64,000 bases of DNA, from assembly GCF_000143415.4 (NCBI RefSeq), contig NW_003314292.1, positions 861,325-925,324 on the forward strand, given 5' to 3'. Within the stretch, counting starts at the first letter, position 1. Every line of letters starts with the position of its first letter. This DNA comes from Selaginella moellendorffii. Taxonomy: Eukaryota; Plantae; Lycopodiophyta. Of the stretch, positions 20,870 through 44,712 are shown piece after piece. The position numbers and the translations under genes are program-made. Under the pieces are notes generated by a model. That model was not told where the DNA came from. It worked only from the letters and a program-made list of their open reading frames with translations, and did no database searches.

Positions 20870-21240
20870 ATGGATTCTAAAGCACTACAGCTTCTTATCC
20901 TCAGCTTGGTTTCAATTGTCCATTTCCCCAACTGCGGGACTTCTCAGTGCGATCGAGCTCATCTTCTCAAAGAATGCGTCCCGTGTGTGGCATCTGGCAC
21001 TGTTCTTGAGCATCCAGACGTCAATTGTTGCAAAGCAGTGAATGCTCTAGGCCACAACTGCTTGTGTTCACTCATTGTTTCTTCTACTGGTGTTCTTGCC
21101 AAAGAAACAATGAAGAGATATGTAGAGTCCTGTCAAGTAGTGCTCCCAGAGGATTACCAATGTGAGTTCAATGATCAAAGTGTTTGTAGTTACTAAAATT
21201 TATTATGCTATTGTTCTTTGCAGGTGAAGGCATCATGTAA
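20870..21240 (+). CDS. nsLTP/8-cysteine-motif protein, copy 1 (exons 20870-21161, 21224-21240; 102 aa)
   Basis: Signal peptide; C-x8-C-x2-C-x13-CC-x9-CxC-x21-C-x9-C; ends LPEDYQC|EGIM. Confidence 0.85.
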
Positions 21241-21430
21241 TGTAAGTATGGATACATGTAAACTTTCTAGTTATATACGTATTTCTATGCAAGTTGAATT
21301 TTAATTATAAACTTAAGACCATTTGGTTCACTAGATTTTTAGAAAACTTGCACAGAATTAACTTTTGGCTTTTGTATAAATCTCAAAGAAATTCTCAACA
21401 TAAAACATCAATTCATCAATCCATTTTTTA

Positions 21431-22012
21431 ATGGCAACTTCAGTCGTGTTTTGCTTCGTTCTCTGCACCTTTCTGGTTCAAGTCAGTGTGGGTTTGCTTG
21501 TACAATATGGCTCCACCACAGTCGGGAATGGCAACTTCGTCTCATTGAGCAGCACCAGTTCAGCCCCTACAGTTGACATTGAAGGATTTGGGAAGAATGG
21601 CACTACTCGTCTCTTCTCTGTGGTCATGGCAGATCAAAAGGCATTGGTAGCGTCAAATAAAGTTTATCCCTACATCAACTTTTGGATTGCAAACATTCCA
21701 GCCGGCAGCACTGGTAAGTAATATATATTTTGGTTTACAAAACTTTACAAATCATGGTGGCTTGGTACAGGAGCTGTGAAGGACAGCATTTTGGAGCCTT
21801 ATGTATCTCCTTCCAACACCAGCAAGAACATTCCATACCCAAATCCATTCAATGCAAGGAACCACACGTATGATTTCGTGCTTGTACCACAGAGGAATCC
21901 CTTGGTGAAGCCCATGGATAGTCGACTTGTCAACTCACTGGCTGATATCATCCAGCAATACCACTGCGGAAGCCCTCTCCAAACGGTCTCCTTTACGACA
22001 TCACTCCATTGA
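21431..22012 (+). CDS. Secreted divergent PEBP (FT/TFL1/MFT-like fold), copy 1 (exons 21431-21713, 21771-22012; 174 aa)
   Basis: Colinear with FT: LLVQYGSTTVGNG ~ LKVTYGQREVTNG; PTVDIEG ~ PRVEIGG; FSVVMAD ~ YTLVMVD; IANIPA ~ VTDIPA; YVSPS ~ YENPS; HTYDFVL; YHCGSPL ~ YNLGLPV. N-terminal hydrophobic signal. Confidence 0.82.
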
Positions 22013-22734
22013 TGTTATTTTGATATTGATATAAGAGGCATGACTCAATGAGTTGAAAGTACTGAGTGATTCTAGAATTTCCATTTATGGAAAAAGGCCA
22101 TCTTTCTTTCGCGAAGTTTATCCTCATGTCCACGCCAGGAGTGCATTCTATGTGTTGTAATTGTGCAATCTGCGAGTGGATCTCATCGGAAGCTCTGAAC
22201 TGGTTTTGAATATCCGGGCCTTGCTGGAGCTGGACGTCGTTAAGTAGAAGTTTTAGCCCCATGGGCTTTGTTGATCAAATCCACGCCAGGAGTGCATTCC
22301 ATAAACGTCTCTTCTTGTCGAAGAATACATGTGATGCCTTTGATGTAGCCTGCGCTTTCGTTCCAGCTCCGTACCAGACCTGAGAAGAAGAAAGCACAGA
22401 GAATAAGAGCTTAGTTCCAGATCGAAAGGAGAAGCATTACCTTGACCTTGACCTGTTCATACAATTTCGTAAAGTCTATCAGCGTGACTACTCCCAGCCT
22501 CGATGTCAAATCCACAGGGCGAGCTCAGGGATCTCGGCGACCAATGTCCGAGCGAAAGGACGCTCAGCAACCGGGACGAATGATCCGAGATGCACGATCA
22601 TCGAACAAAGAAAGAAAAAACTCAAACTTATGAAACCATAGTTTTCTTGAGCTGGTCCAGTCCCACCACTGCACTCACTGGAGCTCGTGGCGCCTCCTCC
22701 ACCTCACTATTCTCGGTCGATCCAATTGATTCTA

Positions 22735-23372: not shown

Positions 23373-23743
23373 ATGGATTCTAAAGCACTACAGCTTCTTA
23401 TCCTCAGCTTGGTTTCAATTGGCCATTTCCCCAATTGGGGGACTTCTCAGTGCGATCGAGCTCATCTTCTCAAAGAATGCGTCCCGTGTGTGGCATCTGG
23501 CACTGTTCTTGAGCATCCCGACGTCAATTGCTGCAAAGCAGTGAATGTTCTAGGCCACAACTGCTTGTGTTCACTCATTGTTTCTTCTACTGGTGTTCTT
23601 GCCAAAGAAACAATGAAGAGATATGTAGAGTCCTGTCAAGTAGTGCTCCCAGAGGATTACCAATGTAAGTTCTATGATCAAAGTGTTTGTAGTCACTAAA
23701 ATTTGTTATGCTATTGTTCTTTGCAGGTGAAGGCATCATGTAA
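23373..23743 (+). CDS. nsLTP/8CM protein, copy 2
   Basis: Intact near-identical copy of 20870-21240. Confidence 0.85.
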
Positions 23744-23991: not shown

Positions 23992-24573
23992 ATGGCAACT
24001 TCAGTGGTGTTTTGCTTCGTTCTCTGCTCCTTTCTGATTCAAGTTAGTGTGGGTTTGCTTGTACAATATGGCTCCACCACAGTCGGGAATGGCAACTTCG
24101 TCTCATTGAGCAGCACTGATTCTGCCCCTACAGTTGACATTGAAGGCTTTGGGAAGAATGGCACTACTCGTCTCTTCTCGGTGGTCATGGCAGATCAAAA
24201 GGCATTGGTAGCGTCAAATAAAGTTTATCCCTACATCAACTTTTGGATTGCAAACATTCCAGCCGGCAGCACTGGTAAGTAATATATATTTTGGTCTACA
24301 AATCTTTACAAATCATGGTGGCTTGGTACAGGAGCTGTGAAGGGCAGCATTTTGGAGCCTTATGTATCTCCTTCCAACACCAGCAAGAACATTCCATACC
24401 CAAATCCATTCAATGCAAGGAACCACACGTATGATTTCGTGCTTGTACCACAGAGGAATCCCTTGGTGAAGCCCATGGATAGTCGACTTGTCAACTCACT
24501 GGCTGACATCATTCAGCAGTACCACTGTGGAAGCCCTCTCCAAACCGTCTCCTTTACGACATCACTCTATTGA
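23992..24573 (+). CDS. Secreted divergent PEBP-like protein, copy 2
   Basis: Intact two-exon copy. Confidence 0.82.
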
Positions 24574-27716: not shown

Positions 27717-28298
27717 ATGGCAGCTTCAGTGGTGTTTTGCTTCGTTCTCTGCTCCTTTCTGATTCATGTTAGTGTGGGTTTGCTTGTACAATATGGCTCC
27801 ACCACAGTCGGGAATGGCAACTTCGTCTCATTGAGCAGCACCAGTTCAGCCCCTACAGTTGACATTGAAGGATTTGGGAAGAATGGCACTACTCGTCTCT
27901 TCTCTGTGGTCATGGCAGATCAAAAGGCATTGGTAGCGTCAAATAAAGTTTATCCCTACATCAACTTTTGGATTGCAAACATTCCAGCCGGCAGCACTGG
28001 TAAGTAATATATATTTTGGTTTACAAAACTTTACAAATCATGGTGGCTTGGTACAGGAGCTGTGAAGGACAGCATTTTGGAGCCTTATGTATCTCCTTCC
28101 AACACCAGCAAGAACATTCCATACCCAAATCCATTCAATGCAAGGAACCACACGTATGATTTCGTGCTTGTACCACAGAGGAATCCCTTGGTGAAGCCCA
28201 TGGATAGTCGACTTGTCAACTCACTGGCTGATATCATCCAGCAATACCACTGCGGAAGCCCTCTCCAAACGGTCTCCTTTACGACATCACTCCATTGA
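27717..28298 (+). CDS. Secreted divergent PEBP-like protein, copy 3
   Basis: Intact two-exon copy starting MAASVVFCF. Confidence 0.82.
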
Positions 28299-31770: not shown

Positions 31771-32109
31771 TCAAGGATGCGCTTGGCTTCTCTGGATACA
31801 ATCGAAGTGCCCAGGGAGACGAATTTTACACTTACTGGAGTATGCCTTGATCACTCTATTAGCATTCTTCCCTTTGGTAGCAACCAGCATGCTACACAGG
31901 CAATCCAAGCTGAGGAGCTTGACGGCCTTGCAGCACGATGCGTCTGGGCTGTTCTTCACGGATCCAAACTGGACACAAGGAGCACACGTATCGAAGACTT
32001 GTGCGCGATTACACCTCATGGAATGTGCTCCTGGCGTGGATATGATCAACAAGATCATCACAAGCACCAGGGGGATAAACTTCGCGAAAGAAAGATGGCC
32101 TTTTTCCAT
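31771..32109 (-). CDS. Second nsLTP/8CM paralog (112 aa)
   Basis: Signal MEKGHLSFAKFIPLVLVMILLII; C..C..C..CC..CLC..C..LPGHFDC pattern equivalent to the array LTP; TATA-like ttataag upstream (~32165). Confidence 0.85.
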   Translation of the reverse strand: MEKGHLSFAKFIPLVLVMILLIISTPGAHSMRCNRAQVFDTCAPCVQFGSVKNSPDASCCKAVKLLSLDCLCSMLVATKGKNANRVIKAYSSKCKIRLPGHFDCIQRSQAHP

Positions 32110-32458
32110 TTTGGAAGCTAGAATCACACTTTCTCACTACTGCTGCGATCTCGATTCTTTTTCTTATAAAGCTAGGGATGGATGTTTGCTTCGTGCTGCC
32201 GCAATGATTCAGCTTTACACGATCAACATAAACGCGTCGTGAATCGATCACTTCAAGAACACTTCAAGCAAAGCAGTGCTGTCATGAGCTCGCTACGAGC
32301 TAGCAAATTAGAAATCAGCTGGTAGCTACATGGAAGCTCGGGGTTGGGGATACTCCCAAATAACTTACCTTGTCCAACACTTGTCCACCCGTTATCTTGA
32401 TAACAAAAATCTTTCATTTTATTGAGTCATGCCTTTTATATCAATAAAAGCAATAACA

Positions 32459-33040
32459 TCAATAGAGTGAGGTTGTGAAGGAGACGGTTTGAAGAGGGCT
32501 TCCACAATGGTATTGCTGAATGATATCAGCCAGTGAGTTGACAAGTCGACTATCCATGGGCTTCACCAAGGGATTCCTCTGTGGTACAAGCACGAAATCA
32601 TACGTGTGGTTCCTTGCATTGAATGGATTTGGGTATGGAATGTTCTTGCTGGTGTTGGAAGGAGATACATAAGGCTCCAAAATGCTGCCCTTCACAGCTC
32701 CTGTACCAAGCCACCATGATTTGTAAAGTTTTGTAAACCAAAATATATATTACTTACCAGTGCTGCCGGCTGGAATGTTTGCAACCCAAAAGTTGATGTA
32801 GGGGTAAACTTTATTTGACGCTACCAATGCCTTTTGATCTGCCATGACCACCGAGAAGAGACGAGTAGTGCCATTCTTCCCAAATCCTTCAATGTCAACT
32901 GTAGGGGCAGAATCGGTGCTGCTCAATGAGACGAAGTTGCCATTCCCGACTGTGGTGGAACCATATTGTACAAGCAAACCCACACTAACTTGAACCAGAA
33001 AGAAGCAGAGAACGAAGCAAAACACCACTGAAATTGCCAT
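32459..33040 (-). CDS. Secreted divergent PEBP-like protein, copy 4
   Basis: Intact two-exon copy in inverted orientation. Confidence 0.82.
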
Positions 33041-33279: not shown

Positions 33280-33619
33280 TGACTTCACCTGCAAAGAACT
33301 AGTGACTACAAACACTTTGATCATTGAACGTACATTGATTATCCTCTGGGAGTACTACTTGACAAGACTCCACATATCTCTTCATTGTTTCTTTTGCAAA
33401 CAAGAGAAGAAACAATGAGTGAACACAAGCGATTGGGGCCTAGAACATTCACTGCTTTGTAACAATTTACGTCTGGATGCTCAAGAACAGTGCCAGATGC
33501 CACACACGGGACGCATTCTTTGAGAAGATGAGCTCGATTGCACTGAGAAGTCCCATAATTGGGGAAATGGCCAATTGAACCAAGCTGAGGACAAGAAGCT
33601 GTAGTGCTTTAGAATCCAT
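33280..33619 (-). pseudogene. nsLTP copy 4, frameshifted
   Basis: 1-bp deletion in signal region (ttggttcaatt vs ttggtttcaatt) and further deletions near 33400 and in the intron. Confidence 0.8.
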
Positions 33620-39163: not shown

Positions 39164-39745
39164 TCAATGGAGTGAGGTCGTGAACGAGACGGTTTGGAGA
39201 GGGCTTCCACAGTGGTATTGCTGGATAATATCAGCCAGTGAGTTGACAAGTCGACTATCCATGGGCTTCACCAAGGGATTCCTCTGTGGTACAAGCACGA
39301 AATCATACGTGTGGTTCCTTGCATTGAATGGATTTGGGTATGGAATGTTCTTGCTGGTGTTGGAAGGAGATACATAAGGCTCCAAAATGCTGCCCTTCAC
39401 AGCTCCTGTACCAAGCCACCATGATTTGTAAAGTTTTGTAAACCAAAATATATATTACTTACCAGTGCTGCCGGCTGGAATGTTTGCAACCCAAAAGTTG
39501 ATGTAGGGGTAAACTTTATTTGACGCTACCAATGCCTTTTGATCTGCCATGACCACCGAGAAGAGACGAGTAGTGCCATTCTTCCCAAATCCTTCAATGT
39601 CAACTGTAGGGGCAGAATCGGTGCTGCTCAATGAGACGAAGTTGCCATTCCCGACTGTGGTGGAACCATATTGTACAAGCAAACCCACACTAACTTGAAC
39701 CAGAAAGAAGCAGAGAACGAAGCAAAACACCACTGAAATTGCCAT
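39164..39745 (-). CDS. Secreted divergent PEBP-like protein, copy 5
   Basis: Intact two-exon copy. Confidence 0.82.
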
Positions 39746-39982: not shown

Positions 39983-40414
39983 TTACATGATGCCTTCACC
40001 TGCAAAGAATAATAGCATAATAAAATTAGTGACTACAAACACTTTGATCATTGAACTTACATTGATAATCTTCTGGGAGCACTACTCCAACACTGCTTGA
40101 TTGAGAAGGAAATATCTAATTGTAATTGTAAATGTATTAGCAAAAACAGTGACTTCCATTTAACATATCTCTTCATTGTTTCTTTTGCAAAAACACCAGT
40201 AGAAGAAGCAATGAGTGAACACAAGCAATTGTGGCCTAGAACATTCACTGCTTTGCAACAATTTACATCTGGATTCTCAAGAACAGTGCCAGATGCCACA
40301 CGGGACGCATTCTTTGAGAAGATGAGCTCGATCACACTAAGAAGTCCTGCAATTGGGGAAATGGCCAATTGAAACCAAGCTGAGGATAAGAAGCTGTAGT
40401 GCTTTAGAATCCAT
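39983..40414 (-). pseudogene. nsLTP copy 5, frameshifted and interrupted
   Basis: 2-bp loss (ccgtgtggca vs ccgtgtgtggca) and a ~75-bp foreign insert at ~40087-40162. Confidence 0.8.
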
Positions 40415-42923
40415 TAGAGGCAACTCCACAGGTAGCAGCAAGGAAGCCTAGTTCTTAGCTAACAAGTAAAGACATGTGAGCTGGTTTGACAGAACGAGCT
40501 ACATTGTGATCAAAGTAATGGACTTGAAGATTTTAAAAATACAAGCGAAATATTTTACTAGAACCAGTAAGAAACAAGAACCTTGTCACTCTCTCTTAGC
40601 TTGTTGCAACTTGCCTAGTCGAAAAACCGTACATTGCCTGCCCAAACCCAGCTTTGCCTATAGTCTTTTGCCTATTATAGCAAACATGGCCGAAGTGCGA
40701 AGGAAAATTGACGATCGAAGTTTCTTTCCCCGTGACCATAGCTCATCAGATAGATAGATATTCACGCGCTTTAAAGAGATGCCACAACGGAGCCTTAGTC
40801 AGACACGGTTTCTAAATCAAGGGATGATCACGATTAAAGGTTTATCGAAACTTCTCCGGTCAAATGAAATCCACGTAACAAGAAACTGCGGACCGCCACC
40901 TTTCTTTTTTCTTTTCTATCCACTTGCCTGAGGCTGTCTCCAAAAGTACACACATTTGTTGCCAAGTTCTCCTTCCTTATAGTTCCATCATGGAGCAAGA
41001 AAGGTATACATACGTTCTTGAGATCACATATGTATACGTCTATACGCCTTGACGAGAAAATAGCTGATCCATATTTGGACCCTTGAACTGTTGGATCGAT
41101 TTTTGGAGCACGAAACACAGTATAGCAAATGTAATGTGGGATCCTCGAGGCCTTTGCTCATATTTGAGGTGCCGAAATCAGACATTGATGGTGTTTAAGC
41201 ACTATCTCATTTTTGCCATCAAGCATTCCAATGGCGAGCTCAAAATGGTTGGGTGCTGTGGAGGTACACAGAAGAAGATATGGTCTCTTTGGTGATAAAC
41301 AATCCCTAGTGAGAAAGTATTTGCATATAAATACATACACACCTGCAAAGATGCAAAACAAAATCAATATCAATCGTGGTGCTTGAGGATTTTATGGCTT
41401 TGACAAAGTCGTACCTAGGGTGAGTTCTATATCCACCAAGTCAATCAAGGAACGGGAAGATGTCAGCAAATCTTTCAATATTTGGGGGATTTTGGGACAT
41501 GGATAGTTCCAGGAGTAGAGATTCCACAATCGGCTCTTGGCCGTGTTCACTGTGCAGCCAGATCCTAAGAATTCAGCGCATCCACCTCGAAAAGGAGGAG
41601 GTGATCGTACGCAGTCCTGTACACCCTAAACAAAATAAGATTAAACAACGTGTTGGCGAACTCTTAGCTCGCTGTGCGGCTGCGATGACCAATCTTGGCG
41701 AGATCCAGAGCTCCGTTTCGAGTGTGCTCGCAATCTCTTTGAAAGTCCAACCGTCCAAGTTTGCCATCGGTGAATCGTCTGGCTCGAGGATCAAAGTTCC
41801 AAAGGAGCTGGACGATGAAAGCCCGGAAGAATCCTTGGGATCTAACAACGCGTGCTAGGAAGCAGATCGTGATTCAGCAAAAGGAAGCGCTCATCTCGTC
41901 CCTGTAGTTCTTTGAATTTTCTGGAACAAGTTCTAGAGTTTGTTCTTTGATTTTTGGCAAGCTCAGCAGCTCGAGGCTCCGGAGAGCCCGCTCGACTTTG
42001 AGCAGCTCAGCGCGAAGTACACGTAGCTCCAGCAGGATCACCACTCCGTGTGCCACCAGCGAGACGTGCTGCTCCAGCAATTCCCGGATCTTCAAGATCA
42101 AGGTGAAAGGTCACAGAAGGGGTAGAGTTCCAATTCATGTCGGTTGTAACCCAATTGATGGAGAGAGCTCGTCTTGTAGTGTATCACCACAAACTTATCC
42201 GTAGACTGGAATGTGGAGGGCGTTCCGAGGCGTTCGTACAACGTATTTGTACATACATTTAGGTTAGGCTACAGTCCCCTCTACGCCAAAGCTGCAAAAA
42301 ATGCTGCCATGCCGCCACTCGGGAGATTCGAACCCCCGACCCAAAGGTCCTAGTTGATGGCCTGTATGGCAAACTAATTACTTCTAGAATAATGAGCCCA
42401 TTTCTCACATCATAGCAACGATTCTTATACTACGTTGGAAACTGCAACAGACCCCCTCCTCGGCATGATGTTTCAAGAGCATCCTGAACGTGAAGTGAAT
42501 GTTATGCTTTATGCTGACAAGGGCCCAATGTCCTTGTTCTTCCTAGACAAAGCTTGTAAAGCATACATCGAAGGCATTACACATGTAATCTTCGACAAGG
42601 GACGTTTATGGAATGCACTCCTGGCGTGGATGTGATCAACAAAGCAGCACCATGGGGATAAACTCCGCGAAATAAAGATGGCCTAAATGGAAGTCTACTT
42701 AACGACTGCAAGTCCCCGATCTTCAAGACCAGTTCAGAGCTTCCCACTCGTAGATTGCGCGATTACAACTCATAGAATGAACTCCTGGCGTGGATGTGAT
42801 CAAGAGGATCATCACAAGCAGCACCATGAGGATAAACTTTGCGAAAAAAAGATGAAGTTCTAGAATCAATAAGTACTTCCAATTCATTGAGTCATGCCTC
42901 TTATATCAATAAAAGCAATAACA

Positions 42924-43342
42924 TCAATAGAGTGAGGTCGTGAACGAGACGGTTTGGAGAGGGCTTCCACAGTGGTACTGCTGGATGATATCAGCCAGTG
43001 AGTTGACAAGTCGACTATCCATGGGCTTCACCAAGGGATTCCTCTGTGGTACAAGCACGAAATCATACGTGTGGTTCCTTGCATTGAATGGATTTGGGTA
43101 TGGAATGTTCTTGCTGGTGTTGGAAGGAGATACATAAGGCTCCAAAATGCTGCCCTTTACAGCTCCTGTACCAAGCCACCATTATCACATTTGTAAACCA
43201 AAACATATAAGTTGAAGTTACCTGTGCTGCCCGCTGGGATGTTTGCAATCCAAAAGTTGATGTAAGGGTAAACCTTGTTTTGTGCTGACAATGCCTTTTG
43301 ATCAGCCATAACCACCGAGAACAAACTAACAGTGCCATTCTC
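42924..43342 (-). pseudogene. 5'-truncated PEBP-like copy 6
   Basis: Starts at NGTVSLFSVVMADQKAL; lacks signal peptide and first ~55 codons; abuts the RMI1 remnant. Confidence 0.8.
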
Positions 43343-43344
43343 AC

Positions 43345-44712
43345 CACACGCTTAAGAAGAGAATATCTCATGTGTGCCTTTGTAGAAAACACCTGGTATC
43401 TCTTGAGAAAAGCTTGACGTTCTATAGCAGCACTTACATCCAACGGGGAGTGTCCGATCATCCTCTCAACCAGCTGCATAATCGGCGACCATTCTTGATT
43501 AAACAGAATTGCTCGTGGTTCACTAGAGCTTCCATTAAAAGGCTTTCATCTTCGAGCTGGTATGCATCCTTGCTCAGAAAACAATTTCTTTTCTTTTCTT
43601 TTATTACCTTAACTCGGCCTGATTGAACTACACCGGACTCCAAAAACCGCCTCTGTAGAACTGCCAGACGTAAAGGGAGGGGACTCCAGGCTGTCTGCGG
43701 CTGAAAAATGGACGTGAAGATCATAAAACTTACTGCGAAGTTTTCTTCTACTCCTGGTTTCCTGATTGGATTGGAGGAAAAGCATACGAATACGCGAAGT
43801 TCCCAGGCCGACAGGTCCGATGCTGTTCTGAAGTGAAGATAACAAGAATTATGCATGGAGAGAAAACTTGAAAGGCCTTCTTTGTGTTTACTTGGTGTTT
43901 GTTCACTGTAGGAATCCGAACCGCGAGAAAAATCTTCTATAGAAACAGGTGCTTGCCTTGAGCCAGAAAATCAAAATAAGCAAACGCAGTCACTGCGCAA
44001 AGTTAGACCTGTATATGGATGATCACGAACAGTCGAAGAAGGTTGCTGCTCATTCCAGGATTGGCTGCAGCGCCATTGTTTTCTTGGAGTTCGGGGCCAG
44101 GCAGCTTGTGTAAGCTGCTCTTCCAAGTAGTACCACGCGGGTGCCTGCAAATATCCTTAACTAGTACTTGAAGAAGAAAACTTTACCTGTTTCCCCGAGG
44201 AGGTTTGTGTACTTTATGTACCACGCTCTGTCGAGCCTCTTCAAGGTCCTCCAAGAACAGTAACAATTTCCGGGACGAGAAGAAACATCCCCCGACATTC
44301 CTTTCGCATTGGAAGAAAAGAAAATTCAAGGCAAAGACTTGTAATACTTTGAGCTGTGGGGTAGGACGATACTCAATGCCAAAAACTCGTTGAGCATCAT
44401 CGGTCATGGATAGCTTCAAGCTTCGACTTCCAATTCCTTCCTGGTAGTGATCCTTGAAAATGTCCACCGCTTCATCTACCTGTGTGCTATGCTTCCATCG
44501 ATGAAAAGCTATAGAAACCTTCCACTTACTTGTAGAACATAAGTGCATCGCCTGGACCTCTGGAGCGTCGGAGGAGCTGCGCGAAGCATTTCTCGGCGCG
44601 AGAGTCTACCGGTAACTGAGACGCTCCGATCTGCTCGCACAGGCAAGAAGAGAGCCACTGCGCCTTAGGCGAGAACCGTAAAACCCTACTATGGTTCTAA
44701 ACATCCCGCCAT
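43345..44712 (-). pseudogene. RMI1: RecQ-mediated genome instability 1 (RMI1) pseudogene
   Basis: AQWLSSCL..AEKCFAQLL, YVLQ|VDEAVDI, SLKLSMTDDAQRVFGIEYRP, EDLEEARQSVVHKVHKPPRGNR, ..AAW, GRVK|..CFL..EDESLLMEALV resemble plant RMI1. Frameshifts and deletions in exon 1 and elsewhere. Confidence 0.75.

What the first reader, a model, noticed from the sequence alone, without database searches (positions are those of the whole stretch)
21431..22012. Signal-peptide-bearing, pocket-remodelled FT/TFL1/MFT-like PEBP family (5 intact copies)
The 174-aa protein is colinear with FT along its length, and its single phase-1 intron sits near FT intron 3 (after IPA..G). It has gained a hydrophobic ~21-aa signal peptide and three N-glycosylation sequons (NGT, NTS, NHT). 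The hallmark motifs are replaced: DPDxP becomes DQKAL, EYLHW becomes PYINF (Tyr at the FT Y85 position) and GIHR becomes RNHT. Canonical plant PEBPs are non-secreted transcriptional cofactors, whereas the secreted PEBPs I know are animal (PEBP4, Ov16). This looks like an undescribed extracellular, neofunctionalised florigen-family clade amplified in tandem.
Basis: partly seen in the sequence, partly recalled or inferred. Interest (0 to 1): 0.9.

Follow-up and report, generated by a model that had tools for sequence, protein, structure and literature searches.

The report
Secreted, pocket-altered PEBP family in Selaginella
A spikemoss (Selaginella moellendorffii) carries a tandem cluster of small genes whose products have the fold of the flowering hormone FT. 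Unlike FT, they carry an export signal and conserved sugar-attachment sites, and they have lost FT's hallmark pocket motifs; such a plant family is named only by automatic annotation and its function is unknown.

Summary
At 21431-22012 (+) lies a two-exon gene with a 57-nt phase-1 GT..AG intron, encoding 174 aa. The window holds five intact copies (95-99% identical in protein) and one 5'-truncated copy.

The window is Selaginella moellendorffii, or something nearly identical to it.

Pfam PBP does not detect this protein's close relatives. Homology to PEBPs is nevertheless solid:
- phmmer of a paralog against the PDB finds only Hd3a, FT and TFL1 as significant hits.
- A family profile reaches E 1e-13.
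- Intronless Selaginella paralogs (BLASTP E 9e-23 to this protein) pass Pfam PBP.
- An AlphaFold model (pLDDT 83) superposes best on Hd3a, FT and TFL1 (TM 0.75-0.78, Z about 16).

DPDxP, YxHW and GxHR are replaced by DQKAL, YINF and RNHT; the GxHR histidine is kept and now sits inside a conserved N-x-T sequon.

The mature part is under strong purifying selection (dN/dS 0.03-0.18). The hydrophobic N-terminus evolves fast but stays hydrophobic.

Secretion is inferred, not shown. Placement inside the MFT/FT/TFL1 clade is not shown. Expression is low in the runs examined.

No paper describes the family; databases name members only automatically ("PEBP-like protein"). Other first readers of this scan noted the same family on other pieces of this genome.

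The parts
21375..21381 (+). TATAAAT, 50 nt upstream of the ATG; likely the gene's own core promoter
   Evidence: Read from the sequence. The same TTGTATAAAT lies 54 nt before the ATG of paralog P0001 in L001. RNA coverage of the upstream LTP-like gene falls to zero at 21393-21453.
21431..21493 (+). Codons 1-21: hydrophobic N-terminal signal-peptide-like segment (MATSVVFCFVLCTFLVQVSVG), with predicted cleavage after SVG
   Evidence: Hydropathy and the -3/-1 residues. In this segment dN is 0.46-0.54 against dS 0.66-0.73 versus the paralog, while hydrophobicity is kept in all paralogs. No predictor was run.
21431..21713 (+). Copy 1, exon 1 (codons 1-94 plus the first base of Gly95)
21714..21770 (+). 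Copy 1 intron: 57 nt, GT..AG, phase 1, with an in-frame stop
   Evidence: Position and phase are identical in paralogs whose introns are 71, 49 and 76 nt long. Sense RNA depth dips here, but no splice joint was listed.
21771..22012 (+). Copy 1, exon 2 (to the TGA stop)
23992..24573 (+). Copy 2, intact (174 aa)
27717..28298 (+). Copy 3, intact (174 aa)
32459..33040 (-). Copy 4, intact (174 aa); its first 139 aa are identical to GenBank SELMODRAFT_416612
39164..39745 (-). Copy 5, intact (174 aa)
42816..43341 (-). Copy 6: 5'-truncated remnant lacking about the first 54 codons, 93% DNA identity
20870..21240 (+). Upstream neighbour: a secreted 8-Cys LTP-like gene (LTP-A) with an intron at 21162-21223. 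It is repeated with the PEBP-like gene as one unit (also at 23373 and 27122; broken-looking copies at 33335-33584 and 40159-40411).
   Evidence: Splice joint 21161>21224 is seen in 48 reads and depth is about 1200 in run X18. There is no Pfam hit, but UniRef names the fused gene model as an LTP-domain protein.

Best explanation
These are functional genes of a Selaginella-restricted family of divergent, eukaryotic-type PEBP-fold proteins that have been redirected into the secretory pathway.

The 21-residue hydrophobic N-terminus most likely acts as a cleaved signal peptide. It would release a 153-aa minimal PEBP core (equivalent to FT residues 28-167) that is N-glycosylated at up to three conserved sites.

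The canonical anion/phospho-ligand pocket is dismantled:
- DPDxP is replaced by DQKAL.
- The pocket His87 is replaced by Asn.
- GxHR is replaced by RNHT.
- An 11-residue insertion lies in the loop before it.
- The retained pocket histidine sits inside an N-x-T sequon, so a glycan would lie at the pocket mouth.

Two key 14-3-3-contact residues of FT are also gone (Arg62 to Thr, Phe101 to Lys).

The protein therefore cannot work like florigen. I infer that it acts outside the cell, or in the endomembrane lumen, as a non-enzymatic binding protein that uses the PEBP beta-scaffold. The likeliest roles are an inhibitor or binder of another extracellular protein (PEBPs such as yeast Tfs1 and mammalian PEBP1 inhibit proteases) or a carrier of a hydrophobic ligand alongside the co-amplified LTP-like genes.

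Shown here: gene structure, copy number, purifying selection, PEBP homology and fold, motif loss, and low-level transcription. Inferred: signal cleavage, glycosylation, extracellular location and molecular role.
For: Homology and fold:
- phmmer of paralog P0001 against the PDB gives Hd3a 4.5e-5, FT 3.6e-4 and TFL1 2.6e-3, with no other hit below E 1.
- The profile of the three Selaginella subfamilies gives Hd3a 1.1e-13, TFL1 3e-12, PEBP1 2.3e-11 and FT 6.6e-11, over 141 of 148 positions.
- BLASTP to P0005 gives E 9e-23. P0005, P0007 and P0009 pass Pfam PBP at 33.3, 26.3 and 33.9 bits against a cut-off of 24.
- The AF2 model of P0022:105-257 (150/153 identical to copy 1) has pLDDT 83.4 and pTM 0.82.
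- In Foldseek against the PDB, all 47 hits with E<=0.001 are PEBP-fold proteins (PEBPs, mitoribosomal mL38-type subunits, carboxypeptidase Y inhibitor), the best being Hd3a, FT and TFL1 at TM 0.75-0.78.
- VIA-align gives Z 16.3-15.1 for Hd3a, FT, TFL1 and CEN, about 13 for animal PEBP1, and about 9.5 for YbhB and YbcL.
- The ESM Atlas nearest cluster is 'Flowering locus T', TM 0.78.

Real genes:
- dN/dS of the mature part is 0.03-0.13 among window copies (dS up to 0.12) and 0.17-0.18 against paralog P0001 (dS about 0.55).
- The intron position and phase are conserved in P0001, P0002 and P0012.
- Sense reads are present in RNA run X18.

Secretory features:
- Hydrophobic N-termini occur in all three subfamilies; the sequence diverges while hydrophobicity is kept.
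- The three sequons are conserved in every group-A paralog, and a sequon also sits at the GxHR position in group B.
- Group C has a conserved Cys pair joining the N-terminal strand to the C-terminus.
- There is no C-terminal retention or anchor motif.

Own transcription unit: a conserved TATA box, and a coverage gap after the LTP-like gene.
Against: - No signal-peptide predictor and no localisation or proteomic evidence were available. The n-region has no basic residue, and an uncleaved signal anchor is possible.
- Pfam PBP gives no hit for this subfamily.
- Expression is weak. Sense depth is 3-7 in 12% of one RNA run and near zero in another. No read-supported splice joint was found. One contig of uncertain type (X1) runs through the intron unspliced. 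Antisense reads exceed sense reads on exon 2.
- The functional role is pure inference. Model coordinates could not be inspected, so pocket closure was judged from alignments only.
- The model was built for an allele or paralog product (98% identical), not for the window's exact sequence.
Confidence: 0.72

Rival explanations
1. The hydrophobic N-terminus is not cleaved. The protein would then be a type II membrane-anchored PEBP-fold protein, or one retained in the ER or Golgi, with the domain in the lumen or at the cell surface rather than freely secreted.
For: The hydrophobic stretch is fairly long (about 16 residues, VVFCFVLCTFLVQVSV) and the n-region has no basic residue. No predictor was run.
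Against: - Small residues sit at -3 and -1 before a conserved mature start (G|LLVQYGSTTV) in all group-A paralogs, and an equivalent A|SLLIKYG occurs in group B.
- The segment is only 21 residues from Met1 to the first beta-strand of the fold (model residue 1 aligns with FT Leu28).
- The segment evolves at dN/dS about 0.7, as signal peptides do.
Confidence: 0.12
2. The PEBP-like part is the C-terminal domain of an LTP-PEBP fusion protein, as in the GenBank/JGI model SELMODRAFT_413648 (P0022), and has no signal peptide of its own.
For: P0022 (257 aa) joins LTP-A exon 1 to the mature PEBP-like sequence. The two genes are only about 190 nt apart on the same strand.
Against: - RNA reads splice 21161>21224 (48 reads) into a short exon that ends at a stop.
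- Coverage falls to zero at 21393-21453, before the PEBP-like ATG, and no joint to 21487 is seen.
- Paralog P0001 has the same ATG, hydrophobic N-terminus and TATA box with no LTP gene within 6 kb.
- The N-terminal codons are intact in all five copies.
Confidence: 0.03
3. The family is a decaying relic: duplicated PEBP pseudogenes or barely expressed 'junk' paralogs whose pocket loss reflects loss of function rather than a new function.
For: All signature motifs are lost, there is no Pfam hit, RNA depth is low with antisense reads, one copy is truncated, and the neighbouring LTP copies look broken.
Against: - There are five intact ORFs with intact splice sites.
- dN/dS is 0.03-0.18 on the mature part over dS up to 0.55.
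- Sequons, the fold core and the intron are conserved across paralogs that are 63-71% identical over exon 1 (79-84% over the mature part).
- The AF2 model is confident.
Confidence: 0.05
4. On origin: the family does not descend from the plant MFT/FT/TFL1 lineage. It would instead be a separate, older eukaryotic PEBP lineage, or a horizontally acquired one, that survives only in Selaginella.
For: - Paralog P0005 scores mammalian PEBP1 (2.2e-11) well above TFL1 (7e-6).
- The family profile scores fly CG7054 and rat PEBP1 about as high as Hd3a and TFL1.
- RefSeq names relatives after nematode secreted antigens.
- Group C genes are intronless.
- The group A/B intron is not at the exact FT intron-3 position.
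Against: - Group A's only significant PDB sequence hits are plant CETS proteins.
- Structural matches rank plant CETS first, by 2-3 Z units over animal PEBP1.
- The nearest Atlas cluster is streptophyte FT.
- No relative outside S. moellendorffii was found among 1.84 billion representatives, except a doubtful Botryococcus match.
- MFT, the only PEBP type reported in lycophytes (PMC8408984), has no solved structure and was absent from my comparisons.
Confidence: 0.3

Closest known systems
Plant CETS/EuPEBP proteins (FT, Hd3a, TFL1, CEN, MFT)
   Same: - Same fold over the whole domain: Z 15-16, rmsd 2.3-2.6 over 134-138 residues, 21-28% identity.
- Shared core residues: Tyr at FT-85, the xNIP/TDIP strand, the Tyr108 and Pro111 equivalents, and the GxHR histidine.
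- A phase-1 intron in a Gly codon within 4 codons of FT intron 3.
   Different: - A hydrophobic signal-like N-terminus replaces FT residues 1-27.
- DPDxP, His87 and GxHR are lost.
- An 11-residue insertion precedes the GxHR position.
- Three conserved N-glycosylation sequons are present.
- The 14-3-3 contact residues Arg62 and Phe101 are not retained.
- The gene has 2 exons instead of the 4-exon structure with 62-bp and 41-bp exons (from established knowledge).
- Pfam does not detect it.
Secreted animal PEBPs (mammalian PEBP4; nematode Ov16/D1-D2, Toxocara TES-26, Tm16)
   Same: A signal peptide followed by a single PEBP domain, with unknown or poorly defined extracellular roles. RefSeq auto-names the Selaginella group-C relatives after them. 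Tm16 matches the model at Z 13.5.
   Different: There is no evidence of orthology. From established knowledge, those proteins keep the PEBP signature motifs, whereas this family has lost them. Structural and sequence matches are weaker than to plant CETS proteins.
Yeast Tfs1p / carboxypeptidase Y inhibitor (PDB 1wpx_B)
   Same: A PEBP-fold protein that works by binding and inhibiting another protein rather than through a phospho-ligand. It matches the model at Z 14.6.
   Different: Tfs1p is cytosolic and inhibits through its N-terminal segment, which here is replaced by the signal peptide. No inhibitor function has been tested for the Selaginella protein.
Selaginella group-C paralogs (P0005 '26 kDa secreted antigen-like', P0007 'protein D2', P0009 'FT-like')
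   Same: Same species and the closest relatives (30% identity, E 9e-23). They also have signal-like N-termini, tandem arrays and loss of DPDxP (DRRAS).
   Different: - They are intronless.
- They still pass Pfam PBP.
- They keep both pocket histidines.
- They have no sequons but a conserved Cys pair.

Membership tests
PEBP superfamily (Pfam PF01161 PBP; PEBP-like fold) | PEBP fold: two antiparallel beta-sheets, colinear with solved PEBPs | tested here: met
   AF2 pLDDT 83.4 and pTM 0.82. In Foldseek against the PDB, all 47 hits with E<=0.001 are PEBP-fold proteins, best TM 0.78. VIA-align Z 16.3 over 136-138 residues. In the Atlas, all nearest models are PBP.
PEBP superfamily (Pfam PF01161 PBP; PEBP-like fold) | Match to the Pfam PBP profile above the gathering score (24 bits) | tested here: not met
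   No hit for the two exon translations (E<=10), for paralogs P0001 and P0002 (E<=10), or for P0022, which carries the near-identical mature sequence (E<=0.1). Relatives P0005, P0007 and P0009 do pass at 33.3, 26.3 and 33.9 bits.
PEBP superfamily (Pfam PF01161 PBP; PEBP-like fold) | Statistically significant sequence homology to bona fide PEBPs | tested here: met
   phmmer P0001 against the PDB: Hd3a 4.5e-5, FT 3.6e-4. Family profile against the PDB: 1.1e-13 to 4e-6 for 14 PEBP chains. BLASTP to Pfam-positive P0005: 9e-23.
PEBP superfamily (Pfam PF01161 PBP; PEBP-like fold) | Signature motifs DPDxP and GxHR and the pocket His of YxHW | tested here: not met
   The alignments show DQKAL, RNHT (only the His kept) and YINF (His replaced by Asn).
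Plant MFT/FT/TFL1 (CETS, EuPEBP) clade | Phylogenetic placement within plant EuPEBPs | not tested
   Canonical plant and animal PEBP sequences could not be obtained by reference: the word-indexed search returned only Selaginella paralogs. Indirect evidence is mixed.
Plant MFT/FT/TFL1 (CETS, EuPEBP) clade | Conserved four-exon gene structure, with introns after FT codon 67, in codon 88 and in codon 102 (62-bp and 41-bp middle exons; established knowledge) | tested here: not met
   There are two exons. The single phase-1 intron lies in Gly95, which HMMER aligns to FT Gly98, so it is 4 codons (3-4 by other gap placements) before the FT intron-3 codon (Gly102). Group C is intronless.
Plant MFT/FT/TFL1 (CETS, EuPEBP) clade | 14-3-3 interface residues (FT Arg62, Thr66, Pro94, Phe101, Arg130; established knowledge) | tested here: not met
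   By the alignment, the window residues are Thr59, Ser63, Pro90 and Lys98. The Arg130 equivalent is ambiguous (Arg136?).
Plant MFT/FT/TFL1 (CETS, EuPEBP) clade | Cytosolic/nuclear protein without a targeting signal | tested here: not met
   A hydrophobic 21-residue N-terminus replaces FT residues 1-27. Localisation itself cannot be tested here.
Secreted PEBPs (PEBP4, nematode Ov16/TES-26 type) | Cleavable signal peptide followed by a PEBP domain | tested here: inconclusive
   The n-h-c architecture and the -3/-1 rule are met by inspection and conserved in paralogs. No predictor or experiment was available.
Secreted PEBPs (PEBP4, nematode Ov16/TES-26 type) | Orthology with the animal secreted PEBPs | not tested
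   Only structural similarity is available (Tm16 Z 13.5), which is lower than to plant CETS proteins.

The most novel reading that the evidence does not exclude
Selaginella has evolved a plant-specific extracellular PEBP system of three subfamilies (groups A, B and C), which may have arisen from its MFT-like gene. In it the florigen fold was stripped of its anion pocket, and in groups A and B a glycan caps the former pocket. The fold would then be reused as an apoplastic binding module that works together with the co-amplified LTP-like proteins (one LTP-B type has an odd cysteine count, and the mature PEBP-like protein has a single cysteine). That would be a new lipid- or protein-handling complex at the plant surface.
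Probability: 0.12. Interest if true: 0.75.

Novelty: new variant of a known kind. Interest (0 to 1): 0.5.

Why it matters
Surveys of plant PEBP evolution report that lycophytes have only one PEBP clade, the MFT-like one (PMC8408984). A review of the whole FT/PEBP/YbhB family lists secreted members only from animals and bacteria (PMC8793217).

This family shows that S. moellendorffii holds at least three further, signal-bearing PEBP subfamilies that motif- and Pfam-based surveys miss. It is a natural experiment on the florigen fold: the pocket and the 14-3-3 interface are removed while the fold stays under strong purifying selection.

If secretion and a binding partner were demonstrated, this would add an extracellular role to plant PEBPs. 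It would also give a contrast case for the debate on whether the PEBP pocket is essential for function.

The practical significance is limited. The family appears lineage-restricted and no function is known.

Tried and rejected
- Pfam on each exon, on paralogs and on the fused model gave no PBP hit. The homology claim therefore rests on PDB phmmer and profile searches, transitive homology and structure.
- The whole 174-aa spliced protein could not be passed by reference, because a stop lies in the intron. I used exon references and the 98%-identical P0022:105-257 as proxy.
- The word-indexed protein search with the family alignment returned only S. moellendorffii proteins, and the exhaustive representative search found only 9 hits. 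I therefore had no canonical PEBP sequences and built no phylogeny.
- The LTP-PEBP fusion model (P0022) is rejected on RNA joints and the coverage gap.
- The Botryococcus P0010 match (4 repeats, about 34% identity over about 60 residues, no Pfam) is left as unresolved and probably not informative.
- RNA evidence for splicing was sought, but no joint reached the listing threshold, and one contig of uncertain type is unspliced.
- Paper searches for the locus tags and for plant secreted PEBPs found nothing specific. Predicted secreted PEBPs are reported for rust fungi (PMC3253089) and listed for Orobanche cumana (PMC11606015), but these are not this family.
Full report
**What is in the sequence**

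At 21431-22012 on the + strand there is a two-exon gene.
- Exon 1 (21431-21713) ends one base into a Gly codon.
- A 57-nt intron follows (21714-21770, GTAAGT...CAG) that contains an in-frame TAA.
- Exon 2 (21771-22012) restores the frame, giving a 525-nt CDS and a 174-aa product.

tblastn with this product finds five full-length copies, starting at 21431+, 23992+, 27717+, 33040- and 39745-, each with E about 1e-108. It also finds a remnant at 42927-43345(-). The remnant's homology starts only at gene nt 164, and it is 93% identical in DNA, so it is a 5'-truncated copy.

The five intact copies keep the start codon, splice sites and stop codon. They share 166-173 of 174 residues and are 96-98% identical in DNA, intron included.

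**Which organism**

The first 139 residues of copies 4 and 5 are identical to GenBank protein SELMODRAFT_416612 (P0004). The mature part of every copy is 149-150/153 identical to the C-terminal part of SELMODRAFT_413648 (P0022). The window is therefore Selaginella moellendorffii, or something nearly identical.

Those two GenBank models are chimeric:
- P0022 joins the upstream LTP-like exon to the mature PEBP-like part.
- P0004 runs from exon 2 into unrelated sequence.

No correct 174-aa model of the window's copies was found in the protein collection.

**Is it a PEBP?**

Pfam's PBP profile (PF01161) does not detect this subfamily. There was no hit on the exon translations, on paralogs P0001 and P0002, or on P0022. 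Four independent lines nevertheless establish homology.

1. phmmer of paralog P0001 (82% identical in the mature part) against all PDB sequences returns Hd3a (4.5e-5), FT (3.6e-4, 4.2e-4) and TFL1 (2.6e-3). Nothing else scores below E 1.
2. An exhaustive profile search of 1.84 billion representatives finds only nine proteins. Eight are from S. moellendorffii. Three of them (P0005, P0007, P0009) pass Pfam PBP at 33.3, 26.3 and 33.9 bits against a cut-off of 24. P0005 aligns to the window-type mature protein over the full domain with BLASTP E 9e-23.
3. A profile of the three Selaginella subfamilies hits 14 PEBP chains in the PDB. The best are Hd3a 1.1e-13, fly CG7054 3.7e-13, TFL1 3e-12, rat PEBP1 2.3e-11 and FT 6.6e-11, over 141 of 148 profile positions.
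4. An AlphaFold2 model of P0022:105-257, built with a 16-row family alignment and no templates, is confident (pLDDT 83.4, pTM 0.82).
   - In Foldseek against the PDB, all 47 hits with E<=0.001 are PEBP-fold proteins (PEBPs, mitoribosomal mL38-type subunits, carboxypeptidase Y inhibitor). Hd3a, FT and TFL1 come first at TM 0.75-0.78.
   - VIA-align gives Z 16.3-15.1 for Hd3a, FT, TFL1 and CEN, with rmsd 2.3-2.6 over 134-138 residues. It gives about 13 for animal PEBP1 and about 9.5 for bacterial YbhB and YbcL.
   - The nearest ESM Atlas cluster is 'Flowering locus T' at TM 0.78, and the language-model neighbours are all PBP clusters.
   - Model residues 1-153 align to FT residues 28-167. The mature protein is thus a minimal PEBP core without FT's N-terminal 27 and C-terminal 8 residues.

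**Motifs**

In the HMMER alignments the FT positions map onto the window protein as follows.

| FT feature | FT residues | Window protein |
|---|---|---|
| DPDxP motif | DPDVP, 71-75 | DQKAL, 68-72 |
| YxHW region | EYLHW | PYINF: Tyr81 opposite Tyr85, Asn83 opposite His87 |
| GxHR motif | GIHR, 116-119 | RNHT, 124-127: His126 opposite His118, retained |

The GxHR histidine survives and is now the middle residue of the N125-H-T sequon.

An 11-residue insertion (SNTSKNIPYPN...) precedes this motif and is the least confident part of the model (block pLDDT 57).

FT's 14-3-3 contact residues Arg62 and Phe101 align to Thr59 and Lys98. Thr66 aligns to Ser63 and Pro94 to Pro90. Florigen-type complex formation is therefore not expected.

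**The wider family**

S. moellendorffii has three subfamilies.
- Group A is this window's type, together with P0001, P0002, P0018 and P0020. It carries DQ(K/R)AL, YIN(F/Y)W and NHT.
- Group B comprises P0003, P0006, P0008 and P0012. It is further degenerated, with an NNS sequon at the GxHR position.
- Group C comprises P0005, P0007 and its tandem neighbours, and P0009. It carries DRRAS, keeps YxHYW and xHxY, and is Pfam-positive.

All three groups have hydrophobic N-termini. For P0009 this is true only if the single-exon ORF is used instead of the RefSeq model. Group C has no sequons, but it has a conserved Cys pair linking the first strand to the C-terminal residue, as expected for extracellular proteins.

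Groups A and B share the phase-1 intron at ANIPAGSx|G, with intron lengths of 57, 71, 49 and 76 nt. In group C the PEBP domain is on a single exon: P0005 and P0007 are intronless, and so is P0009 if the single-exon ORF is used.

**The intron argument**

From established knowledge of FT gene structure (coding exons of about 201, 62, 41 and 224 nt), FT intron 3 is phase 1 in the Gly102 codon.
- HMMER aligns the split Gly95 to FT Gly98, and FT Gly102 to residue 99.
- The loop between the conserved Pro (IP) and the next conserved Tyr is 15 residues here and 14 in FT.
- The intron is therefore 3-4 codons from the FT position, in the same phase.

'Near FT intron 3' is literally right. With intronless group-C relatives, however, the intron may be either a retained intron blurred by loop indels or a separate gain. 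It is weak evidence of ancestry.

**Are the genes functional?**

Nei-Gojobori estimates give dN/dS of 0.03-0.13 for the mature part among window copies (dS up to 0.12). Against paralog P0001 the value is 0.17-0.18 (dS about 0.55). The 21 N-terminal codons show dN 0.46-0.54 against dS 0.66-0.73. This is strong constraint on the fold and relaxed constraint on a segment that only needs to stay hydrophobic, which is the usual signal-peptide pattern.

The three sequons are conserved in all group-A paralogs.

**Transcription**

A TATAAAT lies 50 nt upstream of the ATG. The same TTGTATAAAT occurs 54 nt upstream in the P0001 locus, which has no LTP neighbour.

In stranded RNA run X18 (12% of the run was read), the picture is as follows.
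- Sense depth is up to 6.6 on exon 1, 1.4 in the bin holding the intron, and 2.7-3.9 on exon 2.
- No joint reached the three-read threshold.
- Antisense reads (7-12) outnumber sense reads on exon 2.
- Run X19 is almost empty.
- One contig of a run of uncertain type (X1) crosses the intron unspliced.

Expression is thus real but low in these samples, and splicing is supported by conservation rather than by reads.

The upstream LTP-like gene is about 200-fold more abundant (depth about 1200). It splices 21161>21224 (48 reads) into a stop, and its coverage ends before the PEBP-like ATG. This rejects the fused GenBank model.

**Context**

The PEBP-like gene is repeated together with an upstream secreted 8-Cys LTP-like gene (LTP-A).
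- LTP-A copies that translate uninterrupted across exon 1 begin at 20870, 23373 and 27122.
- Two-piece, probably broken copies lie at 33335-33584 and 40159-40411.
- A second LTP type (LTP-B) is intact at about 31780-32110(-), downstream of copy 4. It scores 23.1 bits against Pfam PF00234.
- Only a remnant of LTP-B lies downstream of copy 1.

Paralog P0002 also has an LTP_2 gene 2.3 kb away, whereas P0001 does not. The association is suggestive, but it was not examined further here.

**What it most likely does**

The shown facts are a constrained PEBP scaffold, loss of the pocket signature and of the 14-3-3 contacts, and secretory-type sequence features in all three subfamilies. The inference is a cleaved signal and a glycosylated 153-aa protein in the apoplast or endomembrane lumen.

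Because a conserved sequon and an insertion sit at the former pocket, I expect no phospho-ligand binding. I expect the protein to act by surface binding. My rough odds are:

| Role | Odds |
|---|---|
| Inhibitor or binder of an extracellular protein such as a protease (precedent: Tfs1 at Z 14.6, PEBP1) | 40% |
| Hydrophobic-ligand carrier working with the LTP-like proteins | 25% |
| Something else | 35% |

None of this was tested.

**Known or new?**

UniProt auto-names group-A paralogs 'PEBP-like protein'. RefSeq auto-names group-C members 'protein D2', '26 kDa secreted antigen-like' and 'FLOWERING LOCUS T-like'. The superfamily relationship was therefore already picked up by pipelines.

I found no paper on these genes.
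- The broad EuPEBP survey states that lycophytes have a single, MFT-like clade (PMC8408984).
- The family-wide review lists secreted members only in animals and bacteria (PMC8793217).
- Predicted secreted PEBPs are reported in rust fungi (PMC3253089).

I rate this a new variant of a known kind: a plant, signal-bearing, pocket-degenerate PEBP family. It is moderately interesting, lineage-restricted as far as the databases show, and without functional data.

Other first-stage notes of this scan describe the same family on other pieces of this genome. I used them only as leads.

Noticed in passing
window 20870-21240 (+); also starting at 23373 and 27122; 33335-33584 (-); 40159-40411 (-): A secreted 8-Cys LTP-like gene (LTP-A, 102 aa, intron 21162-21223) is co-repeated immediately upstream of each PEBP-like copy. 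It is highly expressed in RNA run X18 (depth about 1200) and about 40-fold lower in X19. The two minus-strand copies come as two tblastn pieces each and look broken.
   Followed up: partly
window about 31780-32110 (-); remnants at 22088-22160 and 22268-22302: A second, divergent LTP-like gene (LTP-B) lies downstream of copy 4. It is 35% identical to LTP-A, scores 23.1 bits against Pfam PF00234, and has 9 Cys after its signal. Only a remnant lies downstream of copy 1. RNA reads at depth 150-175 cover just the two short pieces, with 20 replaced letters between them, so they come from an intact relative elsewhere.
   Followed up: partly
GenBank models P0022 (SELMODRAFT_413648), P0004 (SELMODRAFT_416612), P0024 (SELMODRAFT_413642): The v1 gene models of this cluster are chimeric: one is an LTP-A + PEBP-like fusion that skips the signal peptide, and the others run from PEBP-like exon 2 into unrelated sequence. 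UniRef consequently names them as an LTP-domain protein or as a 'Ubiquitin-like protease' protein.
   Followed up: partly
window 21759-21941: In stranded RNA run X18, antisense reads (depth 7-12) outnumber sense reads (3-4) over exon 2 of the PEBP-like gene. Their source (which copy, which transcript) is unknown.
   Followed up: no
P0010 (Botryococcus braunii, 1451 aa), residues about 219-288, 542-595, 860-899 and 1172-1225: Four repeats show about 34% identity to the segment 'VVMADQKAL...YINFWIANIPAGS...YPNP' of the mature protein (E 1e-4 for the whole library), with no Pfam hit. It is unclear whether this is a distant PEBP-like repeat or chance.
   Followed up: partly
L002 (GL377595.1 344568-361158) and cluster members P0007, P0013, P0015, P0017, P0021, P0023, P0025: The intronless group-C secreted PEBP-like genes also form a tandem array on one S. 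moellendorffii scaffold (SELMODRAFT_416299 to 416313).
   Followed up: no
L004 3323-3838: The RefSeq model of 'FLOWERING LOCUS T-like' XP_024514883 (P0009) uses a 274-nt intron and an odd N-terminus. A single-exon 171-aa ORF that starts with a hydrophobic signal-like sequence fits the family better.
   Followed up: partly
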